Below are positions 40,250-54,289 of a stretch of DNA of 64,000 nucleotides, one piece after another. The notes below the pieces were generated by a model. The model was not told the DNA's origin. It saw only the letters and a list, made by a program, of their open reading frames with translations, and searched no databases. Numbering within the stretch: the stretch's first letter is position 1; every line of letters begins with the position of its first letter. Both the position numbers and the translations under genes were made by a program. The stretch covers positions 1 to 64,000 of IMG/VR virus record IMGVR_UViG_3300035070_002626; one strand, written 5' to 3'.

Positions 40250-40632
40250 TTTACTTCTGTGTATCCGTCTCCGAGATCACGCTCTCTTGTAAAGCGTACT
40301 TCAGGATCTGCTTGGAATTGTTCGTATGTTTCCATAACAACATTACGGCATACATTTTGAAACCAGCGATCAACAATTTCGTGGTCAGGTTCATTTGGTT
40401 GTCCTTGGTAACCAGCCCTTACAAGATTTGCTATAAACTTTTCATTCCAGTCAAGTTCAAATGCGCCCTGGTCGATGTCACCTTCGGCAAGTTCCATGCT
40501 TAGTATAGCAACATAAGGCTCGCCCTTTTCAGTGGCAATCTCTTTGTCAGTTTTAGTTACTTTCTTGGGTTTAACAGCAGGCTTAACTTCTGGTTTTGTT
40601 AAGCCTAGTGTCTTTTTAAATTTATCAAACAT
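40246..40632 (-). CDS. Hypothetical phage protein
   Basis: AAGGA RBS before MFDKF; FELDWN..F motif. Confidence 0.65.
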   Translation of the reverse strand: MFDKFKKTLGLTKPEVKPAVKPKKVTKTDKEIATEKGEPYVAILSMELAEGDIDQGAFELDWNEKFIANLVRAGYQGQPNEPDHEIVDRWFQNVCRNVVMETYEQFQADPEVRFTRERDLGDGYTEVK

Positions 40633-41395
40633 GCGTGTTCCTTTTAAATACTGGGATAGGCTGCATCTTATGCAAATTGCGTTTGCGAATCTCAAGATAT
40701 TGTTTTACTTGAGTTTTGTCCTCTTCGCCAAGCGACTCAACATCAATACCTTGCTCGTCAATGTCCATGCATTTTTCTAAATCACTGTAGCTCATGCCAT
40801 GCAATTGATCCTCATCAACACGCCCATCATCCCACAATCCATCTGTGGGTTTGGCATCGATAATTTCTTGGCTAACTCCAAGTTGTTTACCTAATGCCCA
40901 TACTTCAGTTTTTGTTAAGTCTGCAATTGGAGAGATATCAACTCCCCCGTCTCCGTACTTAGTGTAAAAACCTACTCCAAAGTCTTCTACTTTGTTGCCT
41001 GTTCCGACTACAATACCGCCATGCGTTTGCGCTTTTTGATACAATGTCATCATGCGTAATCTGGCACGACTGTTTGCTAGTGCTAGTGGGGAATAAGCAT
41101 GTTGAAACAAGTCTTCAAACTTCTCGAATACATCTGTAAGATCGATTGTTTCAAAGCTGGCGTTCATGTACTGTGTGTTTAGGCGCAAGCAATGATCAAC
41201 ACCCAAGTCTGTTTGCTCTGCTTTTTGTCGAATTGGCATAACCAAGCACAACGTGGGCACACCGGATAACGCACACAGTGTACTGACAACAGCACTGTCA
41301 ATTCCGCCACTAACACCAACTACTAATTGATCAATCCCGTTTTTAAGTGCATATTCTCTAATCCATTGCGGAATATCTTTTGTTAAATCACTCAT
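40625..41395 (-). CDS. nadE: NH3-dependent NAD+ synthetase
   Basis: GVSGGIDS PP-loop, NSRARLRM, GTGN..E, GFYTKYGDG, PTDGLW, DEDQL. Confidence 0.92.
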   Translation of the reverse strand: MSDLTKDIPQWIREYALKNGIDQLVVGVSGGIDSAVVSTLCALSGVPTLCLVMPIRQKAEQTDLGVDHCLRLNTQYMNASFETIDLTDVFEKFEDLFQHAYSPLALANSRARLRMMTLYQKAQTHGGIVVGTGNKVEDFGVGFYTKYGDGGVDISPIADLTKTEVWALGKQLGVSQEIIDAKPTDGLWDDGRVDEDQLHGMSYSDLEKCMDIDEQGIDVESLGEEDKTQVKQYLEIRKRNLHKMQPIPVFKRNTHV

Positions 41396-41467
41396 AATTG
41401 CTTTCTTACTTTTTCGTATTGCTCTTCGGTAATCTTTTTGCCTTTAATATAATTCATGTCTTCTTTG

Positions 41468-42364
41468 CTAAGTCCCCCAGGCATTTCCGAATAAACTAAT
41501 GTGGAGTCGGGGAGTGAATCTCCATCCTTCGTCCATACACGCTTGGGCAACGTCATTAACATTGAGGGAATATTCTTCACTGCGACCGCCCATTGGCATA
41601 AGATATACTGGACATTGTACCCCGGCACTTTGATAAGCACTGACAGCTTTTTTGACTTCAACAAAATCGTCTTGATCAGCGACAACAAACTTAAAATAAA
41701 TGTCACTACCGTCAACAAGGCTGTACTCATGAGCAACATTAGGTTTAATAGCATCTTCCCAAGATTCTCCCGAAACACTAAGTTTTGGGGAACAACTCCA
41801 AGTGACTGTAAAGTCGTCATTGTTGTTGAGATAGTTGAAGAAATCATCGTGTAGGTGTTGTGTAGTGTTTGTTTCAAATGTAACATTTTTCAAGTCCTGC
41901 ATACGTGGGTGTTCAAATAGTTCAACATACAATCGTTGCCAAGCAAGCAATGGTTCACCACCAGTTAAGATAAGATGAACGTCTTGTCCATTGTCTTGCA
42001 CCCACTTACCATTGGGAGTAAGCGATAATAGATGTTCAACTACTTCGTCAATTGTTGCTTCTTTGTTAAAGTGCTTAAACTCGGGATAGATACTTGCATA
42101 TGTATCACAACCTGTGTGAATAATAGGCAAGTCATTAAACTCCTTAGTTGTTTTATCAACGCCGGCGTCCAATAATGCTTTTACTTCTGCATTGTAACGC
42201 TGCCCGTTTGCATGTTTTTCTGCACGACTGGGCTCATCTTTGCCGAGGCCAAAGTTCATACAACGCAAGTTACAACCAAAGGTGCGTAGGAATACACTGG
42301 GTACTCCTACAAACTTGCCTTCGCCTTGCACACTATAAAATGCTTCACTATATCTTAGTTTCAT
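41468..42364 (-). CDS. queE: 7-carboxy-7-deazaguanine synthase (radical SAM)
   Basis: FYSVQGEG, FLR.FGCNLRC...CDT, LTGGEP, FETN, SPK, RLH..LFG. Confidence 0.92.
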   Translation of the reverse strand: MKLRYSEAFYSVQGEGKFVGVPSVFLRTFGCNLRCMNFGLGKDEPSRAEKHANGQRYNAEVKALLDAGVDKTTKEFNDLPIIHTGCDTYASIYPEFKHFNKEATIDEVVEHLLSLTPNGKWVQDNGQDVHLILTGGEPLLAWQRLYVELFEHPRMQDLKNVTFETNTTQHLHDDFFNYLNNNDDFTVTWSCSPKLSVSGESWEDAIKPNVAHEYSLVDGSDIYFKFVVADQDDFVEVKKAVSAYQSAGVQCPVYLMPMGGRSEEYSLNVNDVAQACMDEGWRFTPRLHISLFGNAWGT

Positions 42365-42987
42365 TTCGATACCTCTTCGTTTGGATCCCAACGTTTCCAC
42401 CATTCTTCCCACGGAAATACTATCCAAGACGGGTCGTCGATTTTATTAATTTCTTCAGCGCAATATCTAATAGGTAATTTGCTTTCACTTGCAGTATTAT
42501 CATACAGCACAGCAACTCGTACTGTGTTCTCCCACACAAGATTCCACAACTGTTCGCTGTTGTCTCGACTAGGAGAACAATTGGCTTCCCAATCTTGCTT
42601 GATCCAGTTCAGCGTAGCACCACTGTCGTTAATATCGTCGACAATAAGGATTTTCTTTTTAAGAGATGGATCCCATCGTGCGCCAGACATACCAGTTTTA
42701 GTTTCATCATTGTAACCAAACGCTTCTTCGGCCATCCAGCAGTTACTTTCGCAATCTTCTGGTTTACCATCCCGCAACCGTACATCCAATGTGTGCATCT
42801 TAACATCGAGATACTGACTTATTAAGTTTGCAACTGTTAAGCCACCACGTGTAATACCGACAACATAATCTGGTTGCCAATTGTCAATTTGCATTTGTCG
42901 CAATATGTCTTGAGTTTGCCGTTGCACATCATGCCATGTTACAAATACTTTTTTCACACTTTTCTCGCTTTTACCATCATATGCCAA
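42361..42987 (-). CDS. Type I phosphoribosyltransferase (xanthine/guanine PRT-like)
   Basis: GITRGGL, LIVDDINDSGAT PRPP loop, WIVFPWE. Confidence 0.88.
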   Translation of the reverse strand: MAYDGKSEKSVKKVFVTWHDVQRQTQDILRQMQIDNWQPDYVVGITRGGLTVANLISQYLDVKMHTLDVRLRDGKPEDCESNCWMAEEAFGYNDETKTGMSGARWDPSLKKKILIVDDINDSGATLNWIKQDWEANCSPSRDNSEQLWNLVWENTVRVAVLYDNTASESKLPIRYCAEEINKIDDPSWIVFPWEEWWKRWDPNEEVSK

Positions 42988-43730
42988 CCCAGGTATTCGT
43001 TAACTGCTTCACGCATTTCCTCGCTCATAGCAGCAAACCAGGGTTCTAACACATAGTTTCCCTTCTTGTACTCTTCTATATTATACATGAAACAGTGGCT
43101 TTGGCGCAACCTTTCAATTGTCCATTTTGTAGTAGGCAACAACTCATATATCTCGTCTTTGCTATATGCTTGTGCATAAGGACACGCATCTTGTGCTTCG
43201 TATTGATCCAGACCTTTTTGTATCATTGCCATTTTCCAAGAGTTTTTAGCATATACCAAAAGACGCAGTTCGCCGCCGTCAACTAGTGCATTGTGCATGT
43301 TGTTCAAGCTCAATTCAATGTCTGGAAAATGGTGTATTACTCCCATGCTGTATACAAAGTCAAATTTACCAAGATCGCTAAGGTCATCCTGTACATTACG
43401 CACATGAAACTCTCCGGGTAATCCTAGTACATCAAATCTCTGTTTACAAAGATCGATGCTTACACTAGAAAGATCAATGCCTACATATTCAGCTCCGTGT
43501 TTAGCAAATTCTTCAGCTTCGGTTCCAATGCCTGATCCTACTTCAAGTACTCGTTTTCCTTGCCATTGGTGATATCCAGCAAATTCACGTAGGTGCGGCT
43601 CGACTTTAAATCGTCGCTTGCTAACTTCGGCAAAAAACTCTTTAGTACCAACAGGGCTTGTGCCATGATTGATATTACACGGCTGAGCATTCCAGTAATC
43701 TGCAATGCGTTGTTTTAAATCACTGCTCAT
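42954..43730 (-). CDS. Class I SAM methyltransferase
   Basis: VLEVGSGIG, GIDLS, FDFVYS.GVIHH. Confidence 0.88.
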   Translation of the reverse strand: MSSDLKQRIADYWNAQPCNINHGTSPVGTKEFFAEVSKRRFKVEPHLREFAGYHQWQGKRVLEVGSGIGTEAEEFAKHGAEYVGIDLSSVSIDLCKQRFDVLGLPGEFHVRNVQDDLSDLGKFDFVYSMGVIHHFPDIELSLNNMHNALVDGGELRLLVYAKNSWKMAMIQKGLDQYEAQDACPYAQAYSKDEIYELLPTTKWTIERLRQSHCFMYNIEEYKKGNYVLEPWFAAMSEEMREAVNEYLGWHMMVKARKV

Positions 43731-44556
43731 ATTTCCAAGTTCCTAAAAATCCTTGAGGGTCGTTTTCTCTCATGCGTGTCCAGACGTCATACCCGCCTTT
43801 ACGTGCACCATCTAAATATCCATTGTCTTGACCAAGTCGTTTGCGGAACCATTCCATTTTGTAACCCCATAGAATCCTTGTTTGCGCAGTCGGGGGATAA
43901 AGAAAATCCTTGGGGTTAGACATGTCGCCTTCGAGTCGTTCTGGCTGTCGCTCTGCATATGTTTCGTCGTCGTTGTTGCCAGTTAAGTCAGCTCTGTCGT
44001 GGATGCACTCGCTTTTGAGTTGAATCATTGCATCACATATATATGCTACTTGACTAATCCATCCGTCGGTAATAACATGCGGAGATACACAGCCAAAAAG
44101 TATCAACCAATCTCGGGGAATAACCGGAAAGATAGCATATGGATGACCGTGATTATCTGAGAATCTTTGTACTGCAAATTGCCCTGAATGGCTGAGAATT
44201 TCAGTGTCCCATCCCTTGCTCACCATTATAGCATCATCATTCCAAACACACAGCCATTCGCCTTTACTATGCTGGGCTAATATATTAGTGTATTCGTTTA
44301 GTCGATGATATCCCATGCGAGGTTGTGTAAACACATACAGATCTAAATCTGCTTCTTCAAAATATGGAATCATGTCACTTTCAACATAGTCAATAGTTTT
44401 TTGATCATCGTCATCAATTGCAATCATGAATTCAATATCATGCGGGTTATCAGCAGTATCAATCATGCTCTGCATACTGCTCAATGCTTGTACTGGTCTC
44501 CCGCGAGTTGGGAACATTACAGATATTTTCTTACTTGGATTAATTTGAAATGTCAT
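43720..44556 (-). CDS. GT2-like (GT-A) glycosyltransferase
   Basis: ISVMFPTRGR, IDDDD, WNDD (DxD-like). Confidence 0.75.
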   Translation of the reverse strand: MTFQINPSKKISVMFPTRGRPVQALSSMQSMIDTADNPHDIEFMIAIDDDDQKTIDYVESDMIPYFEEADLDLYVFTQPRMGYHRLNEYTNILAQHSKGEWLCVWNDDAIMVSKGWDTEILSHSGQFAVQRFSDNHGHPYAIFPVIPRDWLILFGCVSPHVITDGWISQVAYICDAMIQLKSECIHDRADLTGNNDDETYAERQPERLEGDMSNPKDFLYPPTAQTRILWGYKMEWFRKRLGQDNGYLDGARKGGYDVWTRMRENDPQGFLGTWKYEQ

Positions 44557-45173
44557 TATCGTTTCTCTATAATTTTATCAGCCAAGCCCCATTCAACTGC
44601 TTCTGCCGCAGTAAGGAATGTATCAAACTTCATAGTCTCTGACATTTCGTCATATGTCTTGCCGGCTGTGTTGTGCTTAACGTAAAGCTCTGTAAGGCGT
44701 CGATTTACTTTTTTGCTCTCTTCCATGCTGCGTACTGCATCTTCAAACTGTAGCTCTTGGACATACACACTACCGCTTGTTCCACGTGTACCTGAGCTCA
44801 CACGGTGAATCATTGTTCGTGATTCTGGCAATACAATACGCTTGCCTGCTGCACCTGCTTGTGCAAGGAATGAGCCCATGCTGCATGCTTGTCCGATAAC
44901 TACTGTGGATACATCGCACTTGATAAATTGCATGGTATCGTAAATACCAAGTCCTGCACTTACCTGCCCTCCTGGGCTGTTAATATAAAGCAAGATGTCC
45001 TTGTCTGGGTCTTCGCTTTCTAAAAACAACAGTTGTGCAATAATTGCATTAGCCATATTGTCCTCAACTGGACCATTCAGCATGATAATACGATCTTTCA
45101 GTAATCGACTGTAAATGTCGTATGCACGTTCGCCTTTTGAAGTAGTTTCAACTACCATTGGAATTAAGGACAT
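44556..45173 (-). CDS. clpP: ATP-dependent Clp protease proteolytic subunit
   Basis: [24 protein letters not shown] (Ser), MIH (His). Confidence 0.95.
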
Positions 45174-45649
45174 TATTCAGAAAACCTTTCTTTGCGTACA
45201 ATAAATGGTGTGTAAATTGCGCTGTTAGCACCGTGCTCCATGCACTCTGCAGATTCGCACCAACAACGATTGTCTGTTGCTTCTCTAATAAGTTTATCAG
45301 CAAACTTCCATGCGTGTTCTGCAAACTTTTCTGCACCCACTCCGTCTAGTACTGTAACTTCTGCTAGACCCATGTTTTCAAGTTCTGCAAACTTGTACAA
45401 GAACGGATCTTCTCTATCAATTACTGTCTTATGATCAAATGTATCTTCTAGCCATGCTTTAAGAGGTTTAAGTCCTCCAAAGTCAACGGCCCAGTTTTTA
45501 TTGTCTAGCTCGCTACATCCAAATGTAAACTTGAAACCCAAACTATATCCGTGTAAGAATTTACAATGTGAATGGTCTGCATGTGGTTGACGGAACACCG
45601 CTGAAAGTCCGATGTTGTGTCCGTAAGTTTTTGTTGAATAATGTGGCAT
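45173..45649 (-). CDS. queD: 6-carboxy-tetrahydropterin synthase
   Basis: [22 protein letters not shown]-terminal E...N.A. Confidence 0.9.
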
Positions 45650-45675
45650 TCTATTTTCCTTAATGTAACAGGTCA

Positions 45676-45708
45676 GAATGTTTTAAGACGGATGATCCTT
45701 CGACGTCT
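45676..45708 (-). promoter_or_regulatory. Candidate preQ1-I-like riboswitch upstream of queD
   Basis: AGACG-UCGAAGGAUCAUC-CGUCU-UAAAACAUUC: 5-bp P1, UCG...C loop, A-rich tail, possible GAA:UUC pseudoknot. Confidence 0.5.
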
Positions 45709-45718
45709 ATAATAGTTA

Positions 45719-46444
45719 TCAGTTCTTCCAGACGTGTGCAGAATAACCTTTACCATTGGTATCCCCGCCCTGATTGTCTAGTTCTTCTCCATTGTAAGAC
45801 ACACCGTCGATGATGTCTTCCCCGTTTGGATATTCATTGCAGTGGAACATCAGTTTCTTAGGATCAAATTCGCCTACTGTTTTGATGATAGCATCAAAAA
45901 AACTGCCTTTTTCACTGCTATACATTTGTAGTACGTATTCGCCTTGTTCTTCATACTCTTCACCTTCGCCCCAATCGGTGCCTTCAACCTCGTAATTGGT
46001 TTCCTCTTGCAACTTGTCAACTAGGTCGCTTACTTTGTCGTCAATTACATCAGCAACATGCTTGCTCATGTATTCATCACTGTCAACTTCGTTGATAATA
46101 AGATAAGCACTACTGTATTCAACTCCCATTTGGTGACAAAACTCATTAGGTGCTTCGTACCAAGGTGATTTAAATGCGGATTCGCCATATTCAGTTAGAA
46201 AGTCTGCTTCTTTCGGAATAGTTCCTAGTTCATCGTAATCACAATCGTCTGGATCATCATTGATCAGATACTCTACCAAGTCGCTGTCGTGATGCTCTTT
46301 TAAGTGTGCGTTCCAAAATTCATATGCTTCTTTGGTGATATTTATGTATGCTGCTTCACCACCATAACCTCCAATGCTAAGACGATAATATCGTGGGCCC
46401 TTGATAGTGTCAATTAGTTCTTCTTTTTGTTCAATACTAGCCAT
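45719..46444 (-). CDS. Hypothetical highly acidic protein
   Basis: GGGAG RBS before MASIEQK. Confidence 0.65.
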   Translation of the reverse strand: MASIEQKEELIDTIKGPRYYRLSIGGYGGEAAYINITKEAYEFWNAHLKEHHDSDLVEYLINDDPDDCDYDELGTIPKEADFLTEYGESAFKSPWYEAPNEFCHQMGVEYSSAYLIINEVDSDEYMSKHVADVIDDKVSDLVDKLQEETNYEVEGTDWGEGEEYEEQGEYVLQMYSSEKGSFFDAIIKTVGEFDPKKLMFHCNEYPNGEDIIDGVSYNGEELDNQGGDTNGKGYSAHVWKN

Positions 46445-46823
46445 TTGTATAACTCCCTGCGCCCGGAATAACATTGCGAACACCGCCAGTTGGGTCAGCG
46501 CAATCCCCTTCACGACGGAAAATTAAATGTACATGAGGATACATACAAGTTTGCCCGGCGCTCTCGCCTATGTTAATGCCAACATTGTATCCAGTGATTT
46601 CATTATTTTGTACTTGAACATTTTCGTGTCCCATGGTGCATGCATATTTGAAACACTTCATAATGCTATCCAGTGTAGCATCACGAGGTACAACAAGAGT
46701 ATGCCCAGGAGTAACCGGAAAACCATCGTTGAAAATTACAAAATCTCTAGTTTCAAACTGCACATTAGTCCAAGGTGCTCGACCTTCGGCTTGTGCTACG
46801 GCTAACGTATCTAGTCTATCCAT
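46437..46823 (-). CDS. HIT-family nucleotide hydrolase
   Basis: FPVTPGHTLVVP, GYNVG.N.G..AGQ...PHVHLI. Confidence 0.9.
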   Translation of the reverse strand: MDRLDTLAVAQAEGRAPWTNVQFETRDFVIFNDGFPVTPGHTLVVPRDATLDSIMKCFKYACTMGHENVQVQNNEITGYNVGINIGESAGQTCMYPHVHLIFRREGDCADPTGGVRNVIPGAGSYTNG

Positions 46824-46873
46824 TGTATTCTCCGTTGTGTATAGATTTATTGTACTATGTTTAATAGTATATG

Positions 46874-47746: not shown

Positions 47747-48445
47747 TTACTTTCCACAGGAAAACTCTTGTTGCAATTTGATGTTGTCAAAGAATTCTTT
47801 CTTTGTACCAGAGTCTTCCCTGAAACTACCTTTAAGCACAGTTGTTTGGGTAAGACTACTACTCGCCATAATGCCGCGATTCTCACAACAACCGTGTGTT
47901 GCTTGGATATACACACCCAGGTTTTCTGCACCGGTGGCGCTGGAAATCTCCCGTGCAATATCATTTGCAAGTTCTTCTTGTAGAGTTCCACGCCGAGCGC
48001 ACCATTGTGCAATACGTGTGTACTTGCTGAGTCCAATAAGTTTATCAGCAGCAATAATACCAATGTATGCTACACCGCTTACTGGCTGGTGGTGATGACT
48101 ACACATGCTCTTTAGCTCACTGCGCACTACTAGCATACCTTCATAGCGATCGTCGCTGTCATTGGGAAATGCAGTTGCACTTGGCATAGGATCATAACGT
48201 CCTGCCATGATCTCGTTAAAGTACATCTTAGCCAGTCGACGTGCAGTGCCGTGTGAGTTAGGGTCGTTCTCTCGATCAATCAACAGTGTGTCGAGCACAC
48301 CTTCAAACGCTGTAGTAGCCTCGTTAATCAAATCTTCTTTAATGTTAGGTGTAATATAATCTGAAATATTATCGCCGGCCCAGTATCGTTTGCCTTCTGC
48401 TGTCATATTATCACGCAGAATTTGCGATGTTGTTTTGTTTGTCAT
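47747..48445 (-). CDS. folE: GTP cyclohydrolase I
   Basis: T.RR.AKM, SMCSHH, IGLSK..R, LQE, H.C...RG. Confidence 0.95.
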   Translation of the reverse strand: MTNKTTSQILRDNMTAEGKRYWAGDNISDYITPNIKEDLINEATTAFEGVLDTLLIDRENDPNSHGTARRLAKMYFNEIMAGRYDPMPSATAFPNDSDDRYEGMLVVRSELKSMCSHHHQPVSGVAYIGIIAADKLIGLSKYTRIAQWCARRGTLQEELANDIAREISSATGAENLGVYIQATHGCCENRGIMASSSLTQTTVLKGSFREDSGTKKEFFDNIKLQQEFSCGK

Positions 48446-48451
48446 TTGTTT

Positions 48452-48478
48452 CTCCGAGTTAGGGTCGTGGATGACCAC
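48452..48478 (-). promoter_or_regulatory. Candidate compact pseudoknot leader sequestering the folE RBS
   Basis: GGUC-AUCCAC-GACC-CUAAC-UCGGAG; loop UCC is complementary to GGA of the Shine-Dalgarno. Confidence 0.4.
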
Positions 48479-48518: not shown

Positions 48519-49115
48519 TTAGTCGGTAATTTTTATTTTAGTGAGATCTGGATAAGTTACTTTTTGTGTATCTGGGTCTTTGAGTTGATTTGCGGCAAGC
48601 ATTTCTAATCCTTTAACACAATCTTCAATGGTAGGACGATAATGGTATCCAACTTGAAAGTTAATTTGGTCTTGCCAAGGACTTATACTTAAATCTCTGC
48701 CATCGTAACTAGCACGTTTCAGCCAATGATATTCTTCTTCGTTGTCCAACAAGATTGCGCCACCATGTCCTATTTCCAGTGTTTTGCTGTAACCAAAGCT
48801 CAAACACTGTTGTTGTCCTGGACGGTACATATCACGCTCAAAGCGTCTTGCACTGTCCCAAATATTTGTTGGAGAAATTTTATATTCCCCTTCCCAATCA
48901 TATTCGTCCATTGAGTATGGTATTGCAAGTTTATGAAATATCATTGGCACACTGAGATAAGTTCTTGTAGGAATTCTACATCTTAGTAGGAACCTTTGTT
49001 GCCGTCTCAAACACAATTCAATTGCATGTGTGCAGCAATCTGTTAATACAACATAAGGAGCGCCAGTGAATTTGCTTAGTGCTTGTTCGAATTCAGTAAA
49101 CTTAGTGAAGCTCAC
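48519..49115 (-). CDS. Short DegT-like PLP aminotransferase
   Basis: DCCTHA, TYLSV, WDSA, SF...K.L..G.GGAIL. Confidence 0.72.
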   Translation of the reverse strand: MSFTKFTEFEQALSKFTGAPYVVLTDCCTHAIELCLRRQQRFLLRCRIPTRTYLSVPMIFHKLAIPYSMDEYDWEGEYKISPTNIWDSARRFERDMYRPGQQQCLSFGYSKTLEIGHGGAILLDNEEEYHWLKRASYDGRDLSISPWQDQINFQVGYHYRPTIEDCVKGLEMLAANQLKDPDTQKVTYPDLTKIKITD

Positions 49116-50067
49116 GTGTATACCACTTCCATGCATGTTCAACAATATCATCAGTATGATATTCATTTTGCCAATTTGCTACTTCAAAAAACTTTTTGTT
49201 GTCAGCAACTAATATGTTAGGATCACCGTCACGCATAGGTCCTTCGATTATCTCACGGGGCTTGCTGTTAGATACTACACAACATTTGTTGATAATTTCT
49301 AGATTGCTAGCACCAAGTCCGGTTGATAGATTGTAAAATCCAGCTGTTACTCGATGTTCTGTTGCATAATAGTGCGCTTTGGCAATGTCTGCAACATGTA
49401 CATAATCACGCACACAAGTTCCGTCATCTGTTGGCAATCCTACACCATTGAGTGTAAACACCTGATTATCTCTAATAGCTTCCATTACTCGTGCAATGAT
49501 GTGTGTAGCTGACTTTTCTTGCCCGTGCCGCCCAAGTGGGTCTGCACCAGCAGCATTAAAGTAACGAAATCCAACATAGTTAATGCCATATGCATGACTA
49601 TATGTTTCCAACAGTTGCTCTACCATGTATTTGCTCATGCCATAAGGAGAGATTGGAAACTTGGGGTCGTCTTCATGTATAGGTGTTGCAATTGGATTTC
49701 CATACACCGCAGCACTACTTGAAAAAATAAACTTGCTGTGAATTTTGCGTTCTACCATATAATCCAACAACGTTTTAGTAGCAATAAAGTTGTTGTCATA
49801 GTATGTCTTTGGATCCATAAGACTGGGCCCAACTAAACTTGATCCTGCACAATGCACAATAGCATCTGGGCAATGGAAACTAAAACATTCTAAACCAGAA
49901 GGCGTTGCATATGATTCTTCGTAGTATGAGTCATACCATTGTACAAGGTGCGAACTCAACGGCCGGCGATCTATGCCAACAACTGTCCACCCTTGTTCTT
50001 TGAAATAGATTGCTGTTTGCCCACCGATGTATCCAGCAGCTCCAGTAATAATTACTGTTTTACTCAT
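49102..50067 (-). CDS. galE: UDP-glucose 4-epimerase-like enzyme
   Basis: TGAAGYIG, FSSSAAVYG, SPYG.SK, RYFNAAGA, DGTCVRDYVHV.D. Confidence 0.9.
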   Translation of the reverse strand: MSKTVIITGAAGYIGGQTAIYFKEQGWTVVGIDRRPLSSHLVQWYDSYYEESYATPSGLECFSFHCPDAIVHCAGSSLVGPSLMDPKTYYDNNFIATKTLLDYMVERKIHSKFIFSSSAAVYGNPIATPIHEDDPKFPISPYGMSKYMVEQLLETYSHAYGINYVGFRYFNAAGADPLGRHGQEKSATHIIARVMEAIRDNQVFTLNGVGLPTDDGTCVRDYVHVADIAKAHYYATEHRVTAGFYNLSTGLGASNLEIINKCCVVSNSKPREIIEGPMRDGDPNILVADNKKFFEVANWQNEYHTDDIVEHAWKWYTRELH

Positions 50068-51257
50068 GACTCGATCTTTTTTACTGCATACTTTGCACTA
50101 GCTACATGGTCTCTATAACGATTGCCGGTACGTAGCCATTCTTCGCCATTGCCTTCCATAATATCCACAATTCGGTCAATTGTGCCATCAGTCCAGTCGC
50201 TAATTAATCCCATGTTGTGATGCGGCTCACGCAATAGGTTAGTTAGTTTGTTTTCAGCATCATCAATACTCCACGGAACATACAGTCTATCAGGATCGTT
50301 TGCAAATGTTTCCGGAAAGCTTCTATATGCTGGAAACAACACATTACATCCTAGTGTGTCTGCTTCGCTTACTGTGTTGGATACCCAGTCTTGTAACGCA
50401 CAGTTAAACAGCACACGACTGTCGTTAACAATCTTATAATACTCATCCTTTTTAAGATTTTCGTGAATCTCTAAGATGCCTTGGTCTTGTAATTTTCTAG
50501 CACGGGTTATATAATCTGGATTGTTCGATCGCAATGGACCGCCTTGCAGAATAGCAAATGTTTGCTTACCTGGATAAATCTCGCTATATCGTTCTACTAG
50601 ATCCATAAAGAAGTCAGGTTGCTTTTCTTGATCAAATCGTGCTGTAAATACAATTCGATTAGCACGTTCATAGAAAGGTTTTATTGCTTCTCCTACACGT
50701 TCTTGCACCTCTTGTTTGCCAAATGCAAGCCCAGATACATTGTAGATAGGTGCTTCCCAGCCTGCAATTTTCATGTGTGCTACCATTTCTTCATTGGTAG
50801 CCAGCACTGTTGCAAACTCGCAAACCATCTTTTCGTACAATCCCATCCACTTTGCCATGCCCCAAACATGAACAAAATCATCAGGGTCAATTGCTTGTGC
50901 TAGGCATCGAACAAACACTTTTGGACGTTGATCCGCTGGAATCTGGTCCATGATGTATGGAAGACTTTCGATGCCTGGTTGAAACATGTCTTCAAAATAA
51001 ACTGCATCTTCGCCGGTGCATTCTCCGTTGCGCATCATTTGCACTAGGTTCATAATCTGACTCATACCAAAATAACTGCGTCCGTGTGCATCAAGCACTT
51101 GCCCTACGCTAATACTTTGTGTATCATCAATTGTTTCACCTGGAACATAAACAACATCAAGTCCTCTACGGTCGAAGACACGTTTGTTCCAGTCAGTTAA
51201 TTGAAGGGTGTAACGTGCCTCGTAGCTTTCGAGGCCCATGTAGAAGAGTTTACGCAT
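50064..51257 (-). CDS. GT-B fold glycosyltransferase
   Basis: F.ARFDQEK.P, NCALQDWVSNTVSEA..LG..V..P...SFPE (GT4-like donor motif). Confidence 0.72.
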   Translation of the reverse strand: MRKLFYMGLESYEARYTLQLTDWNKRVFDRRGLDVVYVPGETIDDTQSISVGQVLDAHGRSYFGMSQIMNLVQMMRNGECTGEDAVYFEDMFQPGIESLPYIMDQIPADQRPKVFVRCLAQAIDPDDFVHVWGMAKWMGLYEKMVCEFATVLATNEEMVAHMKIAGWEAPIYNVSGLAFGKQEVQERVGEAIKPFYERANRIVFTARFDQEKQPDFFMDLVERYSEIYPGKQTFAILQGGPLRSNNPDYITRARKLQDQGILEIHENLKKDEYYKIVNDSRVLFNCALQDWVSNTVSEADTLGCNVLFPAYRSFPETFANDPDRLYVPWSIDDAENKLTNLLREPHHNMGLISDWTDGTIDRIVDIMEGNGEEWLRTGNRYRDHVASAKYAVKKIES

Positions 51258-51260
51258 AGT

Positions 51261-51539
51261 TTATCTCCGGCCGTTATAAGGAGTACGGCTTTGATTAGAG
51301 TTGCTTCGATTGTCATTTGAACGGCGAGGACTATGCCCTGCAAAACGCTTGGCATCTTCTTCCCACATATTTTTACAGTTTTTTCCAGCTTGGAATTTAC
51401 GGTATTGCTGATATGGATATTTTTTATTATTATAAAGATCTTCGGGATTATATCGATATCCATAATCGCGACAGAATGAAATGTATGACTCGAGGTCGTT
51501 CCACACTTGGGTTGTTCGAGAATTTTTATAGGTAGCCAT
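51261..51539 (-). CDS. Hypothetical protein
   Basis: AAGGA RBS; within the deazaguanine cluster. Confidence 0.65.
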   Translation of the reverse strand: MATYKNSRTTQVWNDLESYISFCRDYGYRYNPEDLYNNKKYPYQQYRKFQAGKNCKNMWEEDAKRFAGHSPRRSNDNRSNSNQSRTPYNGRR

Positions 51540-51619
51540 TGTATATTCCTTGATGACTAGTTAAAATAAGTGTAGTCAATTTTTTGCCTACAAATATATT
51601 TATACACTGTTTTTTTGTG

Positions 51620-52039
51620 TTATGAATTATTATAATTTATAGTACATCCGTTTTCGCCATCCTCGCTAACTTCAATGACAACATTTCGCCCTGGGTATTT
51701 GCCAGCTACATTAAGATAGATATCGTCTGCAATCATTTCGCAACTTTTGTAATCCAGTGACAAAATTCCATCGCCAAACAGTTTTTGCAACCAACGTGAA
51801 AACTGAATAAACTCGATGTCTCTGTCATTGTGGAATACATCAATTCCCACACGAAAATGAAACATATGCCTGTGCGGATGTCCTAGAAACGATACATCGT
51901 CCCAATCGCCTGTTGCTAATTTAGGATCAGTTAATGCTGCTGGATACTTGTGTATGCCTTCCTTTTGAAAGGTTACCCAAATTTGCCGACGTGCAGATTG
52001 CATCGTTGCATCAATCACGGTGCGTTCATCTTGATTCAT
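51620..52039 (-). CDS. QueD-paralog T-fold protein, DpdL-like (putative CDG decarboxylase)
   Basis: FLGHPHRHMF matches LxxxHRHxF; DRDIEF, SCE, VSEDGENG. Confidence 0.65.
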   Translation of the reverse strand: MNQDERTVIDATMQSARRQIWVTFQKEGIHKYPAALTDPKLATGDWDDVSFLGHPHRHMFHFRVGIDVFHNDRDIEFIQFSRWLQKLFGDGILSLDYKSCEMIADDIYLNVAGKYPGRNVVIEVSEDGENGCTINYNNS

Positions 52040-52545
52040 TATACTACCTTATCTTGTGTGTAAGCACTCCAGGGAGTGAATTTTTCTCTATCCATTAAGT
52101 TGTGCAAACTATGGCACCACACTCCTGGATTTGATTCATTGAAATCAATGTCATCAACTTTGACCATTGCGTTATATCCCCATTGTGATACATATGGAAT
52201 AGATACACGTATTTGTGGAATGAAGTTATCGTATTCGACCATACCGCCTTCTAAACACCATTCTAAGTTAATGTTACTTGGAATATCTAAACTACATATT
52301 ACATCCTTTTTTAGCAAAGGCACTAGCATTTGTTCCCACGCTTCAAACTCATCTGCTGTTTGAGGATTATAACTATGATTAGCTCCAAAGAAGATATGCT
52401 GGCAGTTGTTAGCTTTATATTTGGCTAGTATGCTATCAACCGGCTGGACACCTACTACAAACAAGGTTTTTAATCCATAGGCCGGTGTACGTTCTACTTC
52501 GGTTCCAACAAAGTAGTTAACACCGTCATGTCCTTCACGATCCAT
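52039..52545 (-). CDS. Hypothetical protein linked to the deazaguanine cluster
   Basis: GTEVE.T...G.KTLFV, HIFFGAN, N.GVWC; coupled to the DpdL-like gene. Confidence 0.65.
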   Translation of the reverse strand: MDREGHDGVNYFVGTEVERTPAYGLKTLFVVGVQPVDSILAKYKANNCQHIFFGANHSYNPQTADEFEAWEQMLVPLLKKDVICSLDIPSNINLEWCLEGGMVEYDNFIPQIRVSIPYVSQWGYNAMVKVDDIDFNESNPGVWCHSLHNLMDREKFTPWSAYTQDKVV

Positions 52546-52723
52546 CTTCGATTCCTAACTGTGTTTTTAGTTTTGTCATTTCGTCTTTTACTGCAAGTTT
52601 TTTCTTCTTGATACTGGTAATAGTTTCAACAGAGGTGCTATCACTCTCAAGGTACGAGATCATGTCGTGTAATCGTTTGTGTTCTTTGACTAAGAATTCG
52701 TAGCGTGTTTCTGGAGTTGCCAT
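52535..52723 (-). CDS. DUF465/YdcH-like small coiled-coil protein
   Basis: L..EH..L...I...KKKKL..KDE. Confidence 0.65.
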   Translation of the reverse strand: MATPETRYEFLVKEHKRLHDMISYLESDSTSVETITSIKKKKLAVKDEMTKLKTQLGIEDGS

Positions 52724-52753
52724 TACTAAATAATTCCTTCCTACATTAAACTT

Positions 52754-52782
52754 ATTATACACTAACTATACCATGCTGTCAA
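52754..52782 (-). promoter_or_regulatory. Consensus sigma70 promoter
   Basis: Exact TTGACA-N17-TATAAT. Confidence 0.8.
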
Positions 52783-54289
52783 GTAAATCTAGAGCATTTT
52801 GATCTAAATCTATTTCTTGTTCTGGCTCTTCTACTTCAAACAAACTATTAAACTGTGTTGCTGCATTAACAATACGCTTTCCGGTAAATCCTCTCGTACC
52901 TTTGACACTATCCCAAAATTTGCTGTATTCATTGATGATGCTCATACTTTTATTAAAGTCTTTTGCTGCAAATACACGTTCGACTACATCGCGGAACAAT
53001 ATTCTATCAAATGTTTCTTGTACTAACATGGCAGGAATAACTCCAGCATCGTATTCTCTGTTGGCACGTTGCACCGATTCGATGTGCATCCATACATTGT
53101 GCCCCATAAGCAATGCATACGAAAAACTATCCCATGAAGTTTTTCCTTCTTTGCCAATTTTGTTTAGCATACCTGGGGCATAATGGCATATATCCCCGAT
53201 GGTCATACGTTCTGTAATAGGACTGTTTTCAAAAAGTTTGTGCACACCGTCCTTGAGTACTGCATCTCGGAATGGTGTTGTGTCGCCTGCATATTTTTTG
53301 TTATCAATTGTGGGTTCCATTTGGTAACTCCACTTGCCACGATCTTCAATTCGAATACTATTGTATACTTGCCCGTTTGCTGTAGCAAGAAATGGGCTTG
53401 CACAGTCAAAGCTGATAGTGAAGTTTGCATTTGCATGACGTCTTACGCTGCGTTGAATATCAGTAAGCAAACACGCCCACTCTAGCTTGCTTGTTCCCAG
53501 GAAGTGCATCCAGTCATGCTGCCCTTTTTCAAGCAAACCTTCGTGTATAAGTGTAACCAAACGTTTTAGAACTAGATGCACATCACACATGTTTTGCCCG
53601 CCCATTGCCCAGCCGTTGAATGGTCGATCCATCTTGTCACTGCAAAAGCCTTTCATTTTGTCATACCAATGATCTGCTTCCTGGTGATTTGATCCTTGCA
53701 GCACGTTTAACACCTTTAGGTCGCCACCGCGATTTGCCATCCAAAATTCGTTGTTAAAGTGTGTAGCTGTTACTGCATCATCATAACTATGAATCCCGCA
53801 CAGTGCACTTGCTTTTTTATCCAAGTAAGTCCATGTTGGAATATCCATAGTCATGCCATGTGTAGCAATTCCGTGTTGCCATGCAATAACTTGCTCACGT
53901 TTCTTTTCTGCATTTTTGTCTTTGGGATTAGCCCATTCACCGGGCCACACACCTTTGGCAATCTGGAACCCGCCGCTGTCGGCTAGCATGATAGTGTCTG
54001 CTTCTCTATTACGAACCATGTCTTCTTTTGGCACATGCTTTGATAGATCCATGTCAGCATGCCCAGCACTATACAAACTATATTTGTATGGAAACAACCC
54101 TTCTTTGCTGTTAAGCCAGTTTAAGCTTTCCATATTAGGGATACCTTTAGGCAATCGATCACCGATTATGCTTTTTGATTCATCTGGGTATCGTTCTTTG
54201 CCAATATATCCAGCATAAAAACTGCTAATAGCAGGCAAAAATATTGCATAATCATTTTGTTTTTGTGTTAGGTTATCTTGTTTTAGCAT
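52766..54289 (-). CDS. TGT-superfamily base-exchange transglycosylase, DpdA-like
   Basis: DSGGFQ, MDIP, VLQG, GWAMGG, HFLG, SFD..S and HN motifs; no CxCxxC zinc site; next to clamp/PolB and que genes. Confidence 0.75.
   Translation of the reverse strand: MLKQDNLTQKQNDYAIFLPAISSFYAGYIGKERYPDESKSIIGDRLPKGIPNMESLNWLNSKEGLFPYKYSLYSAGHADMDLSKHVPKEDMVRNREADTIMLADSGGFQIAKGVWPGEWANPKDKNAEKKREQVIAWQHGIATHGMTMDIPTWTYLDKKASALCGIHSYDDAVTATHFNNEFWMANRGGDLKVLNVLQGSNHQEADHWYDKMKGFCSDKMDRPFNGWAMGGQNMCDVHLVLKRLVTLIHEGLLEKGQHDWMHFLGTSKLEWACLLTDIQRSVRRHANANFTISFDCASPFLATANGQVYNSIRIEDRGKWSYQMEPTIDNKKYAGDTTPFRDAVLKDGVHKLFENSPITERMTIGDICHYAPGMLNKIGKEGKTSWDSFSYALLMGHNVWMHIESVQRANREYDAGVIPAMLVQETFDRILFRDVVERVFAAKDFNKSMSIINEYSKFWDSVKGTRGFTGKRIVNAATQFNSLFEVEEPEQEIDLDQNALDLLDSMV

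What the first reader, a model, noticed from the sequence alone, without database searches (positions are those of the whole stretch)
40625..54289. 7-deazaguanine DNA-modification locus with an embedded glycosylation module: candidate new hypermodified base
Seen: directly downstream of PolB and the clamp, one strand carries a TGT-fold transglycosylase, an LxxxHRHxF T-fold protein, a GT-B glycosyltransferase, galE, a short DegT aminotransferase, folE, HIT, queD, GT2, a methyltransferase, a PRTase, queE and nadE. No queC/queF/queA lies in the window. Established: FolE, QueD and QueE make CDG, and phage DpdA proteins swap 7-deazaguanines into DNA. As I recall, LxxxHRHxF marks DpdL, the CDG decarboxylase giving 7-deazaguanine. 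Inference: the GT-GalE-aminotransferase trio sits between the dpdL-like gene and folE. This suggests the inserted deazapurine, or a second base, is further glycosylated with an (amino)sugar, a modification I do not know to be described.
Basis: partly seen in the sequence, partly recalled or inferred. Interest (0 to 1): 0.9.

Follow-up and report, generated by a model that had tools for sequence, protein, structure and literature searches.

The report
Deazaguanine DNA-modification cluster with conserved glycosyltransferase
A giant uncultured phage carries the genes that replace guanine in its DNA with 7-deazaguanine, and a sugar-adding enzyme sits inside that gene set here and in seven phage groups, which suggests a sugar-decorated purine in DNA that nobody has yet measured.

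Summary
On the minus strand, downstream of PolB, lie:
- a 507-aa protein with no Pfam, PHROG or NCBIfam hit, whose AlphaFold model (pLDDT 90) matches only tRNA-guanine transglycosylases;
- a true DpdL homologue carrying LxxxHRHxF;
- FolE, QueD, QueE and a Gpt-like PRTase;
- HIT, a GT4-type GT-B glycosyltransferase, GalE and a 215-aa mini-DegT.

All 38 related IMG/VR loci that hold DpdL and at least 4 kb downstream also carry the GT-like gene. It lies within 3 kb of DpdL in isolates ACP17, PA5oct, Phosso, X1/BUDD, BCSR5 and BUCT-ZZ01. PA5oct is reported to have a restriction-resistant modified G of unknown chemistry.

GalE and the mini-DegT are confined to the marine lineage. NadE, the second GT and the methyltransferase are local add-ons. 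phiST, the only DpdL phage with measured DNA, has plain dDG and no GT.

Verdict: this is a known kind of system (DpdA/DpdL 7-deazaguanine) in a new, widespread variant with an integral glycosyltransferase. A glycosylated deazaguanine is plausible (about 0.4) but unproven.

The parts
56461..59121 (-). Family B DNA polymerase (context; start of the conserved block)
   Evidence: tblastn 52% to Phosso DNA polymerase, 46% to Atu_ph07. PF03104/PF00136 on the 886-aa orthologue in L089.
54762..55493 (-). Sliding-clamp-like protein (context)
   Evidence: tblastn match to the Phosso gene annotated as DNA polymerase III sliding clamp beta. No Pfam hit. Present in 82 of 85 loci.
52766..54289 (-). TGT-fold, DpdA-like DNA-guanine transglycosylase candidate (507 aa). 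Distant subfamily related to the DpdA of ACP17, X1 and BUCT-ZZ01.
   Evidence: AF2 pLDDT 90.3. Foldseek PDB top 50 are all TGT. BFVD hits are phage TGT/DpdA-like proteins. Invariant D104-S-G-G, D149, H262..G265 and D295 in 49 diverse members. hhalign gives 96.5% to ACP17, 95% to X1 and 93% to BUCT-ZZ01.
52535..52762 (-). Small DUF465 protein; not found in relatives
   Evidence: Pfam PF04325, E 2e-7. Found in 0 of 80 loci.
52039..52545 (-). g168: conserved protein of unknown fold, always between the TGT-like gene and dpdL; also present in ACP17
   Evidence: Present in 76 of 80 IMG/VR loci. ACP17 homologue at E 4e-17. 24 invariant residues. No Pfam or PDB hit. More than 7,000 metagenomic homologues, all unnamed.
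51620..52039 (-). DpdL (QueD-like T-fold; proposed CDG decarboxylase)
   Evidence: LxxxHRHxF motif present. 56% identical to ACP17 DpdL and 31% to phiST CGPG_00067. phrog_17812, E 3e-33.
51261..51539 (-). g92: small conserved protein between dpdL and the GT
   Evidence: jackhmmer finds it in 62 of 80 loci. Not found in isolates.
50064..51257 (-). GT-B, GT4-like (BshA/MshA-like) glycosyltransferase; conserved partner of dpdL
   Evidence: AF2 pLDDT 79.4 and Foldseek to BshA at E 7e-12, TM 0.57-0.69. Invariant FxxRxxxEKQ and D/E-x7-E. Present in 38 of 38 loci with DpdL and at least 4 kb downstream. 70% identical to the BUCT-ZZ01 GT next to its dpdL.
49102..50067 (-). GalE-like UDP-hexose 4-epimerase; start overlaps the stop of the GT
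   Evidence: Pfam Epimerase, E 5e-50. TIGR01179 scores 258.9 against cut-off 262.3. Starts at -3 to about +1 kb from window-type GTs.
48519..49166 (-). Mini-DegT-like PLP protein (about 213-215 aa); keeps the D-S-A and S-F-x-x-S-K motifs
   Evidence: DegT Pfam match covers residues 18-55 only. NCBIfam gives weak LegC/WecE matches at 117-177. Same short form in 30 loci and in L089/L090.
47747..48478 (-). FolE, GTP cyclohydrolase I
   Evidence: PF01227, E 4e-37. phrog_2197.
46874..47746 (-). g290, unknown; not conserved
   Evidence: No Pfam, NCBIfam or PDB hit. Absent in the close relative L089.
46437..46877 (-). HIT-family nucleotide hydrolase/transferase; the PRT-HIT-FolE-QueE block is conserved in the second subtype
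   Evidence: PF01230, E 1e-9. P-H-V-H-L-I motif. Synteny.
45719..46513 (-). g264, unknown
   Evidence: No hits.
45173..45649 (-). QueD (CPH4 synthase), with C-x3-H-G-Y
   Evidence: PF01242, E 3e-13. phrog_2389, E 6e-40. Alignment.
44556..45173 (-).
   Evidence: PF00574, E 1e-65. Also present in L089 and L090.
43720..44556 (-). Second, GT-A-like glycosyltransferase candidate (lineage-specific)
   Evidence: phrog_14945 glycosyltransferase, E 4e-12. A-I-D-D-D-D motif. No Pfam or PDB hit. Found in only 3-4 loci.
42954..43730 (-). Class I SAM methyltransferase (lineage-specific)
   Evidence: Methyltransf_23/12/25/11 at E 1e-15 to 1e-17. phrog_22502, E 2e-57.
42361..42987 (-). Purine (Gpt/HGPRT-like) phosphoribosyltransferase
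   Evidence: PF00156, E 8e-16. Best NCBIfam match is xanthine PRTase. PRPP loop I-L-I-V-D-D-x-x-D-S-G. In 21 loci. In the BUCT-ZZ01 cluster it is annotated xanthine-guanine PRTase.
41468..42427 (-). QueE (CDG synthase). The likely start is the Met at 42364, giving 298 aa.
   Evidence: phrog_2076, E 3e-53. A 298-aa orthologue is called in L089. Sequence.
40625..41395 (-). NadE-type NAD synthetase. Adjacent, but not seen in the 80 IMG/VR loci, whose flanks seldom reach this far.
   Evidence: PF02540, E 3e-50. phrog_11189. Found in 0 of 80 loci. Present in the close relative L089.

Best explanation
This is a phage system that replaces guanine in its own DNA with a 7-deazaguanine derivative, and it contains a built-in glycosyltransferase.

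Shown by homology:
- FolE, QueD and QueE convert GTP to 7-carboxy-7-deazaguanine (CDG).
- No QueC is present nearby, so the pathway stops short of preQ0.

Inferred:
- DpdL turns CDG into 7-deazaguanine, as proposed but never demonstrated for phiST.
- The 507-aa TGT-fold enzyme is a distant DpdA. It keeps the DSGGFQ aspartate, the D-x-P aspartate and the F-D-C aspartate in the same order as the catalytic aspartates of TGT. It exchanges G in replicated DNA for the deazapurine and releases guanine.
- The Gpt-like PRTase, possibly with HIT, removes the released guanine as GMP. This would pull the reversible exchange forward and refill the GTP pool.

New step, inferred from conserved gene order:
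- The BshA-like GT4 enzyme adds a hexose or HexNAc from a UDP-sugar to the deazaguanine. It probably works with the conserved unknowns g168 and g92.
- The sugar could be added to the free base before insertion or to the base already in DNA.
- In this lineage GalE and the mini-DegT tailor the donor or the attached sugar.
- The second GT and the methyltransferase may decorate it further.

The result would be a bulky base that blocks restriction enzymes, in the way glucosyl-hmC does in T4.
For: - The TGT fold and conserved aspartates are shown.
- DpdL homology and motif are shown.
- FolE, QueD and QueE are shown.
- The GT-B/GT4 fold with FxxRxxxEKQ and D/E-x7-E is shown.
- In IMG/VR, 38 of 38 loci with DpdL and at least 4 kb downstream have the GT-like gene. 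The median DpdL-to-GT distance is 241 bp.
- In 50,697 phage records, 23 carry the GT-like gene and 28 carry DpdL. Eighteen carry both, always within 3 kb, where about 0.01 would be expected by chance (my arithmetic on the counts).
- These 18 records are six lineages with different hosts: ACP17, PA5oct group, Phosso, X1/BUDD, BCSR5 and BUCT-ZZ01.
- The BUCT-ZZ01 GT is 70% identical to the window's GT, while the neighbouring genes are 26-52% identical.
- PA5oct DNA resists restriction enzymes that have G in their sites and is targeted by nucleases that sense hypermodified bases. Its chemistry is unsolved (PMC12191111).
- Expression of ACP17 dpdL plus dpdA in E. coli gave no dDG, and the authors suggested that other enzymes are needed (PMC10516641). 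ACP17 has g168 and the GT within its FolE...QueE cluster: g168, DpdA-like, GT, DpdL, QueE.
Against: - phiST, the only DpdL phage whose DNA was measured, has plain dDG and no GT.
- Six DpdL lineages lack the GT, including RHph_I1_18, whose DpdL is 60% identical to the window's.
- 7-deazaguanine offers no obvious hydroxyl acceptor, so the chemistry is open.
- The nearest structural neighbours of the GT act on small molecules, not DNA.
- The window holds other sugar genes at 0.3-11.4 kb and 31-33.5 kb, so sugar metabolism in this phage need not all serve DNA.
- The IMG/VR loci belong to one lineage and are not independent.
Confidence: 0.45

Rival explanations
1. This is an ordinary dDG (or dCDG) system. 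DpdA-like, DpdL, FolE, QueD and QueE make plain 7-deazaguanine DNA as in phiST. The GT, GalE and DegT serve an unrelated glycan (host envelope or virion) and are neighbours by accident of genome organisation.
For: - phiST has dDG without a GT.
- Six DpdL lineages lack the GT.
- The window has a separate large sugar island and further sugar genes.
- GalE and DegT are confined to one lineage, and GalE moves position.
Against: - The GT lies within 3 kb of DpdL or DpdA in seven lineages whose genomes are otherwise rearranged. It is often start/stop-coupled.
- 38 of 38 informative metagenomic loci carry it.
- The overlap in isolates is 18 records against about 0.01 expected (my arithmetic).
- In ACP17 and X1 the GT sits between DpdA and DpdL or directly before DpdA.
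Confidence: 0.2
2. The GT acts on a small-molecule intermediate and not on the final DNA base. For example, it makes a glycosylated carrier, a protected precursor or a by-product. The base that ends up in DNA carries no sugar.
For: - The closest structures are small-molecule GT4 enzymes: BshA with malate, MshA with inositol phosphate, LmbT with ergothioneine and SenB.
- A distant GT-like homologue in the Xanthomonas PhiXhv phages sits next to GlmS and a BshB/LmbE-like deacetylase, a small-molecule-type pairing.
- ACP17 dpdL plus dpdA alone gave no dDG. This fits a need for the GT upstream of insertion.
Against: - No hydrolase that would take the sugar off again is evident in the core set.
- PA5oct is sensed by nucleases described as recognising hypermodified bases. 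However, those nucleases also hit preQ0-type phages.
Confidence: 0.2
3. The route is pre-replicative. The purine PRTase turns the deazaguanine base into a nucleotide that is reduced, phosphorylated and incorporated by the adjacent PolB. The TGT-like protein has another substrate, such as tRNA.
For: - A Gpt/HGPRT-like PRTase and HIT are conserved beside FolE and QueE.
- PRTases do this job in pyrrolopyrimidine nucleoside antibiotic pathways (established knowledge of toyocamycin and tubercidin biosynthesis).
- The cluster abuts PolB.
Against: - Every phage shown to carry 7-deazaguanines encodes a DpdA, and all reported cases are held to be post-replicative (PMC10516641).
- The TGT-like gene is the most constant member of the block, present in 81 of 85 loci.
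- No dedicated kinase or reductase was found in the cluster.
Confidence: 0.1

Closest known systems
DpdA3/DpdL 2'-deoxy-7-deazaguanine (dDG) system of Cellulophaga phage phiST (Cui, Hutinet et al., NAR 2023, PMC10516641)
   Same: It has FolE, QueD, QueE, a QueD-like DpdL with LxxxHRHxF and a very divergent TGT-fold DpdA. It has no QueC. It lies next to the replication genes.
   Different: - phiST has no GT-like, g168, PRTase or HIT gene.
- Its DpdA3 is 259 aa and only marginally similar to the 507-aa family (hhalign 54%).
- The window's DpdL is much closer to ACP17's (56%) than to phiST's (31%).
Acidovorax phage ACP17, Pseudomonas phage PA5oct, Synechococcus phage BUCT-ZZ01 and Xanthomonas phage X1 clusters (DNA chemistry uncharacterised)
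   Same: They share the core of DpdA-like, GT-like, DpdL and QueE. FolE and QueD also lie in the cluster in ACP17 and BUCT-ZZ01, and FolE in X1. ACP17 also has g168. BUCT-ZZ01 also has the Gpt-like PRTase and a GT 70% identical to the window's.
   Different: - None of them has GalE, the mini-DegT, the second GT, the MTase, ClpP or NadE in the cluster.
- Their DpdA-like proteins are 416-540 aa. Apart from PA5oct's (34% identical to the window's), they are only profile-level relatives.
Glucosylation of 5-hydroxymethylcytosine in T-even phages (alpha- and beta-glucosyltransferases)
   Same: The logic is the same: a non-canonical base is made first and then decorated with a UDP-sugar by a GT-B enzyme. 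Some relatives carry the base without the sugar.
   Different: - The base is a pyrimidine with a hydroxymethyl acceptor.
- The T4 enzymes belong to other GT families. They were not among the PHROG hits or the top 50 Foldseek hits for this GT.
Galactosyl- and mannosyl-queuosine in eukaryotic tRNA (QTGAL/QTMAN; my own knowledge, not checked in the library)
   Same: This is the only known sugar-decorated 7-deazaguanine, and the sugar is added by nucleotide-sugar GTs.
   Different: - It occurs in RNA, and the sugar goes on the cyclopentenediol side chain of queuosine, not on the deazapurine.
- No Pfam DUF3524 hit appears in any of 24 GT family members.
BshA/MshA GT4 retaining glycosyltransferases
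   Same: They are the best structural matches (E 7e-12 to 1e-9, TM up to 0.69). They share the GT-B architecture and the C-terminal nucleotide-sugar domain motifs.
   Different: - Sequence identity is 10-13%.
- The N-terminal acceptor domain has its own invariant E10, R15-Y16-T17 and D84..D90.
- The genomic context is entirely different.

Membership tests
TGT/DpdA superfamily | TIM-barrel tRNA-guanine-transglycosylase fold | tested here: met
   AF2 model has pLDDT 90.3 and pTM 0.88. The top 50 PDB matches are all TGT or ArcTGT, at E 4e-7 to 1e-5, probability 1.00 and TM 0.41/0.53. BFVD matches are phage TGT/DpdA-like proteins.
TGT/DpdA superfamily | Catalytic aspartates: the DSGG[FY]Q aspartate, the base-binding D in D-E-C-T-P and the nucleophile D in F-D-C | tested here: met
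   D104 (DSGGFQ), D149 (M-D-I-P-T) and D295 (S-F-D-C-A) are invariant in 49 members at 26-81% identity. They occur in the same order as in TGT. The correspondence rests on motifs and on my knowledge of Z. mobilis TGT numbering, which is consistent with the mutant names Y106F, C158V and C281S. It was not checked by residue-level superposition.
TGT/DpdA superfamily | Match to a sequence model of the family (Pfam TGT and relatives) | tested here: not met
   No Pfam, PHROG or NCBIfam hit. No PDB hit with either the sequence or the profile. Precomputed Pfam is '-' for all 120 listed relatives.
tRNA-guanine transglycosylase proper | C-x-C-x2-C...H zinc site | tested here: not met
   No C-x-C-x2-C in the 507-aa sequence (read). 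No cysteine is invariant in the family.
DpdA3 subfamily (phiST CGPG_00065 type) | Detectable homology to phiST or Campylobacter-phage DpdA3 | tested here: inconclusive
   hhalign against phiST CGPG_00065 gives 53.7% over 83 columns. It gives 96.5% against ACP17's DpdA-like protein, 95% against X1's and 93% against BUCT-ZZ01's. The paper's membership table is not held.
DpdA (function) | Exchange of guanine in DNA for a 7-deazaguanine | not testable with these tools
   Only context is available. The gene follows PolB and the clamp and precedes DpdL in 81 of 85 loci. The PA5oct orthologue sits in a phage with a restriction-resistant G.
DpdL | QueD-like T-fold with LxxxHRHxF in place of CxxxHGH | tested here: met
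   The window protein has L-G-H-P-H-R-H-M-F. It aligns with ACP17 L-G-S-P-H-R-H-L-F and phiST L-S-L-N-H-R-H-L-F. QueD of the window and of ACP17 has C-x3-H-G-Y at the same columns.
DpdL | Homology to the proteins named DpdL | tested here: met
   tblastn gives 55.7% to ACP17 (E 1e-38) and 30.8% to phiST (E 4e-7).
DpdL | Context: DpdA, FolE, QueD and QueE present, QueC absent | tested here: met
   No QueC, QueF or QueA family among the about 70 ORFs scanned. This covers the window only, not the whole genome.
DpdL | CDG decarboxylase activity | not testable with these tools
   The activity is also unproven in the literature. Heterologous tests failed (PMC10516641).
GT-B / GT4 retaining glycosyltransferases | Two-Rossmann-domain GT-B fold | tested here: met
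   AF2 pLDDT 79.4. There are 350 PDB matches at E <= 1e-3, and the top ones are BshA, glycogen synthase, LmbT, SenB, MshA and PimA.
GT-B / GT4 retaining glycosyltransferases | E-x7-E motif and G/R-x4-K-G-like donor loop | tested here: inconclusive
   F-x2-R-x3-E-K-Q is invariant. ACP17-type members have E-T-L-G-I-S-W-Y-E, while the window type has D-W-V-S-N-T-V-S-E. Equating these with the canonical motif is my reading.
GT-B / GT4 retaining glycosyltransferases | Pfam Glycos_transf_1 above the gathering score | tested here: not met
   The window protein scores 16.4 bits against a cut-off of 26.4. Six of 24 family members hit at E down to 1e-5. PF00534 is precomputed on some close relatives.
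Phage DNA glucosyltransferases (T4 AGT/BGT type) | Sequence or fold similarity to the known DNA-base GTs | tested here: not met
   No PHROG hit. They are not among the top 50 Foldseek PDB hits.
GalE (UDP-glucose 4-epimerase) | Equivalog model TIGR01179 | tested here: inconclusive
   Scores 258.9 bits against a cut-off of 262.3 over the full length. Pfam Epimerase, E 5e-50.
DegT/DnrJ/EryC1 sugar aminotransferases | Full-length fold-type-I PLP domain of about 360 aa with the catalytic Lys | tested here: not met
   The protein is 215 aa. Pfam aligns residues 18-55 only. NCBIfam matches at 117-177 are weak. The Lys in S-F-G-Y-S-K and the D-S-A motif are present. The short form is conserved in 30 loci, so it is not a pseudogene.

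The most novel reading that the evidence does not exclude
The virion DNA of this phage lineage, and of PA5oct, ACP17, BUCT-ZZ01 and X1, carries a 7-deazaguanine bearing a hexose, HexNAc or amino sugar. It would be made by a dedicated BshA-like glycosyltransferase acting with DpdL, g168 and a new DpdA subfamily. This would be the first sugar-modified purine in any DNA. It might be a C-glycoside on the electron-rich pyrrole carbon. The family is abundant in marine metagenomes: each core protein gave more than 7,000 hits among the at most 8,000 candidates that were scored.
Probability: 0.4. Interest if true: 0.9.

Novelty: new variant of a known kind. Interest (0 to 1): 0.75.

Why it matters
All known sugar-decorated DNA bases are pyrimidines (hmC and hmU derivatives). 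All known DNA 7-deazaguanines carry small substituents.

A conserved glycosyltransferase inside the deazaguanine cluster points to a new class of hypermodified purine in seven phage groups, counting a very abundant marine jumbo-phage lineage. This would affect three things:
- restriction, CRISPR and glycosylase-based defences;
- sequencing of such genomes;
- enzymology, through a GT acting on a deazapurine and a DpdA with a large substrate.

It also offers a concrete explanation for two loose ends in the literature. One is the unidentified modified G of PA5oct. The other is the failure to reconstitute dDG from ACP17 dpdL plus dpdA, where the GT and g168 were left out.

The question is directly testable in cultured phages on laboratory hosts.

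Tried and rejected
**Searches on the 507-aa protein**
- Megablast of the locus against 50,697 phage records found no match.
- Pfam, PHROG and NCBIfam gave nothing on the 507-aa protein.
- phmmer and profile searches of PDB sequences gave only chance hits. The fold was seen only after structure prediction.
- The search for related loci with the 49-sequence alignment failed because no conserved stretch was found. It worked with a 15-sequence alignment.

**Other proteins**
- g168: Pfam and PDB with a profile gave nothing.
- g290, g264 and the second GT: PDB sequence searches were empty.

**Ideas tested and dropped**
- The GT is a QTMAN-like queuosine GT. No DUF3524 hit appeared in 24 family members, so this was dropped as a membership claim.
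- The GT resembles T4 DNA glucosyltransferases. This is not supported.
- The short DegT is a pseudogene. Rejected, because the same short form recurs in 30 loci and keeps the Lys.
- NadE is a QueC substitute that amidates CDG. The only support is a sub-threshold PP-loop match (E 0.0018). The protein is a full-length NadE family member, and I did not see it in the 80 IMG/VR loci, whose flanks seldom reach that far. I keep it as a remote possibility.
- Phosso's 'glycosylase' between the clamp and dpdL is a g168 homologue. No similarity was found.

**Other**
- The supplementary tables of PMC10516641 are not held. I could not check whether the PA5oct-type protein was already listed as a DpdA.
- Promoter and terminator scans were not above the shuffled expectation overall.

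Full report
**What is there**

The region 40.6-54.3 kb is one densely packed minus-strand block that follows PolB (56461-59121), a 323-aa protein and a clamp-like protein.
- FolE, QueD and QueE (phrog_2076, E 3e-53).
- A HIT protein and a class I methyltransferase.
- A type I PRTase whose best NCBIfam matches are xanthine/hypoxanthine-guanine PRTases.
- NadE.
- A GalE-like epimerase (TIGR01179 scores 258.9 against a cut-off of 262.3).
- A DegT-like protein.

Two of those, g168 (52039-52545) and g92 (51261-51539), turn out to be conserved members of the block.

**The transglycosylase**

The 507-aa protein has no hit in Pfam, PHROGs, NCBIfam or PDB sequences.
- A whole-library HMMER search found 933 clusters of relatives.
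- An alignment of 49 members at 26-81% identity has invariant D104-S-G-G, D149-x-P, H262-x-x-G265 and D295.
- With that alignment AlphaFold2 gave a confident model (pLDDT 90.3, pTM 0.88).
- The top 50 Foldseek PDB matches are all bacterial, archaeal or mouse tRNA-guanine transglycosylases (E from 4e-7, probability 1.00).
- In the viral structure library the model matches phage proteins named tRNA-guanine transglycosylase or queuine tRNA-ribosyltransferase.
- The three invariant aspartates sit in DSGGFQ, M-D-I-P-T and S-F-D-C-A. To my knowledge these mirror the DSGG[YF]Q, F-D-E-C-T-P and F-D-C motifs that hold the catalytic aspartates of TGT.
- The zinc motif of tRNA TGTs is absent.
- Profile comparison links the family to the DpdA-like proteins of ACP17 (96.5%), X1 (95%) and BUCT-ZZ01 (93%), but only weakly to phiST DpdA3 (54%).

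I conclude that it is a TGT-fold enzyme of a distant DpdA-like subfamily. Its activity on DNA is inferred from context.

**DpdL**

The protein is 56% identical to the ACP17 protein and 31% to the phiST protein that were given that name. The paper stresses that the activity was never reconstituted. [quoted passage not shown]

**The glycosyltransferase and its synteny**

The 397-aa protein is only a sub-threshold Glycos_transf_1 match. Its model (pLDDT 79) is a GT-B enzyme closest to the GT4 retaining transferases BshA, MshA, LmbT, SenB and PimA. The family keeps F-x2-R-x3-E-K-Q and a D/E-x7-E motif.

I fetched 80 IMG/VR loci through the TGT-like protein (53-69% identical) and mapped the window's proteins on them.
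- The order PolB-(g323)-clamp-TGT-like-g168-DpdL-(g92)-GT is conserved.
- All 38 loci that contain DpdL and extend at least 4 kb beyond it contain the GT-like gene. The median gap is 241 bp.
- The family has two branches, the window type (about 397 aa) and an ACP17 type (about 350 aa). They are 21-24% identical over their full length.

These metagenomic loci are one lineage, so the independent evidence comes from isolates.
- In 50,697 phage records, DpdL occurs in 28 and the GT-like gene in 23. Eighteen records have both, always within 3 kb.
- The 18 records are ACP17, the PA5oct group, Phosso, Xanthomonas X1/BUDD, Burkholderia BCSR5 and Synechococcus BUCT-ZZ01.
- In ACP17 the order is g168, DpdA-like, GT, DpdL, QueE. 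In X1 it is GT, DpdA-like, DpdL, QueE. In BUCT-ZZ01 it is DpdA-like, DpdL, GT.
- BUCT-ZZ01's GT is 70% identical to the window's, although its DpdL, QueE, QueD and PRTase are only 26-52% identical. This suggests either transfer or strong constraint on the GT.

**What is not conserved**

- GalE is start/stop-coupled to window-type GTs. In the second subtype it lies between PolB and the clamp or is absent.
- The 215-aa DegT-like protein follows the GT in 30 loci. It is a shortened form that keeps the PLP lysine. None of the isolates has either gene in its cluster.
- The GT-A-like gene, the methyltransferase, ClpP and NadE are shared only with close relatives.
- Six DpdL lineages have no GT: RHph_I1_18, Vibrio Bakedbeans and D479, Aeromonas Ahp1, Chryseobacterium MA9V-3 and the phiST group. 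phiST DNA is plain dDG at all G positions.

The GT is therefore an optional addition to a DpdL core. This is the pattern expected of a decorating enzyme, as with glucosylation of hmC. It also shows that DpdL does not need the GT.

**Experimental hints from relatives**

PA5oct shares the TGT-like protein (34% identical), the GT, DpdL and QueE. [quoted passage not shown]

I found no paper in the held library that describes a glycosylated 7-deazaguanine in DNA or assigns a role to this GT.

**Mechanism proposed**

Steps shown by homology:
- FolE, QueD and QueE make CDG.
- No QueC is present in the window.

Steps inferred:
- DpdL makes 7-deazaguanine.
- The TGT-fold enzyme exchanges it for G in DNA.
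- The Gpt-like PRTase, conserved with HIT next to FolE and QueE, converts the released guanine to GMP. This would drive the exchange and feed GTP back to FolE.

Step inferred from gene order only:
- The GT, probably with g168 and g92, attaches a UDP-sugar-derived hexose or HexNAc to the deazapurine, before or after insertion.
- GalE and the mini-DegT tailor the sugar in this lineage.
- The acceptor atom is unknown. Candidates are the carboxylate of CDG, an exocyclic nitrogen, or the nucleophilic pyrrole carbon of 7-deazaguanine.

My confidence by level:
- about 0.9 that this is a DpdL-type deazaguanine DNA-modification cluster;
- about 0.7 that the GT belongs functionally to it;
- about 0.4-0.45 that the final DNA base carries a sugar.

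**Rivals**

1. The GT genes serve an unrelated glycan (0.2). The window does contain other sugar genes. These are a nonulosonic/amino-sugar island at 0.3-11.4 kb and a PMM plus carbamoyltransferase at 31-33.5 kb. Against this rival stands the repeated adjacency of the GT to DpdL in rearranged genomes.
2. The GT acts on a small-molecule intermediate and the DNA base is plain (0.2). This fits the small-molecule acceptors of its structural neighbours and the GlmS/BshB-like context of a distant homologue in Xanthomonas PhiXhv phages.
3. The PRTase feeds a pre-replicative nucleotide route (0.1).

**Novelty and verdict**

The kind of system (DpdA/DpdL 7-deazaguanine modification) is known. Three things are new:
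- a very divergent DpdA-like subfamily that no sequence-family library used here recognises;
- the conserved unknown g168;
- above all, a glycosyltransferase integrated in the cluster across seven phage groups (six isolate lineages plus this marine one).

I rate this a new variant of a known kind, with interest 0.75. It can be settled by nucleoside mass spectrometry on phages that are already in culture.

Noticed in passing
window 264-11428: A separate sugar island that looks like a nonulosonic-acid or amino-sugar pathway. It holds a CMP-sugar cytidylyltransferase (264-941), a NodU/CmcH carbamoyltransferase (920-2458) and an FkbM methyltransferase (2449-3294). Three unknown genes lie at 3574-6877 and one at 6876-8450. 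It continues with a MocA oxidoreductase (8431-9309), a full-length DegT aminotransferase (9297-10382, E 5e-103) and an SDR 4,6-dehydratase/epimerase (10379-11428). ThyX follows at 11470-12141.
   Followed up: partly
window 31224-35698: A eukaryotic-type phosphomannomutase (31224-31940), a second carbamoyltransferase (31918-33498) and a B12-binding radical SAM enzyme (34100-35698) lie together. This could be a carbamoylated or methylated sugar or some other tailoring. No link to the deazaguanine cluster was tested.
   Followed up: no
window 44556-45173: A ClpP-family protease gene sits between QueD and the second GT. It is conserved in close relatives, where a Bax1-I/TMBIM membrane protein gene follows it. 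Its role in a base-modification cluster is unexplained.
   Followed up: partly
window 41468-42427: QueE appears to have an insertion of about 50 residues between C-N-L-R-C and the next cysteine (G-C-D-T). This would split the usual radical-SAM C-x3-C-x2-C cluster motif (read).
   Followed up: no
L086 (Synechococcus phage BUCT-ZZ01) 7998-9164: The GT is 70% identical to the window's GT, while the flanking QueE, PRT, QueD, FolE and DpdL are 26-52% identical. This suggests horizontal transfer of the GT between a freshwater T4-like cyanophage and marine jumbo phages, or unusually strong constraint.
   Followed up: partly
L088 (Xanthomonas phage PhiXhv-15) 6747-9981: A distant GT-like homologue without DpdL sits after GlmS and a BshB/LmbE-like deacetylase. 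This hints at GlcNAc transfer followed by de-acetylation in another phage system of unknown target.
   Followed up: no
L089 6971-8495: In the 320-kb close relative the TGT-like gene is called as two pieces (169 and 347 aa) where the window and L090 have one 507-aa gene. This is either a frameshift or a sequencing error in that contig.
   Followed up: no
P0204: One 590-aa metagenomic protein joins the GT (PF00534) to an SDR N-terminus (PF00106). This is either a GT-GalE fusion or a one-base assembly error at the overlapping stop/start.
   Followed up: no
window 52782-52754, 48517-48489, 46877-46849, 46413-46385, 59455-59427 (minus strand): Five near-perfect TTGACA-17-TA(T/C)AAT sites (11-12 of 12) lie on the coding strand. 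Most are at gene boundaries: before DUF465/g168/DpdL, before FolE, at HIT and before PolB. The total number of promoter-like sites is not above the shuffled expectation.
   Followed up: no
window 13676-19073 and 61443-63186: A MoxR-type AAA ATPase (17982-19073) lies near a DUF2201 metallopeptidase/VWA protein (13676-14923). A ferritin/Dps-like protein (61443-61886) lies next to a SPASM radical SAM enzyme (62125-63186).
   Followed up: no
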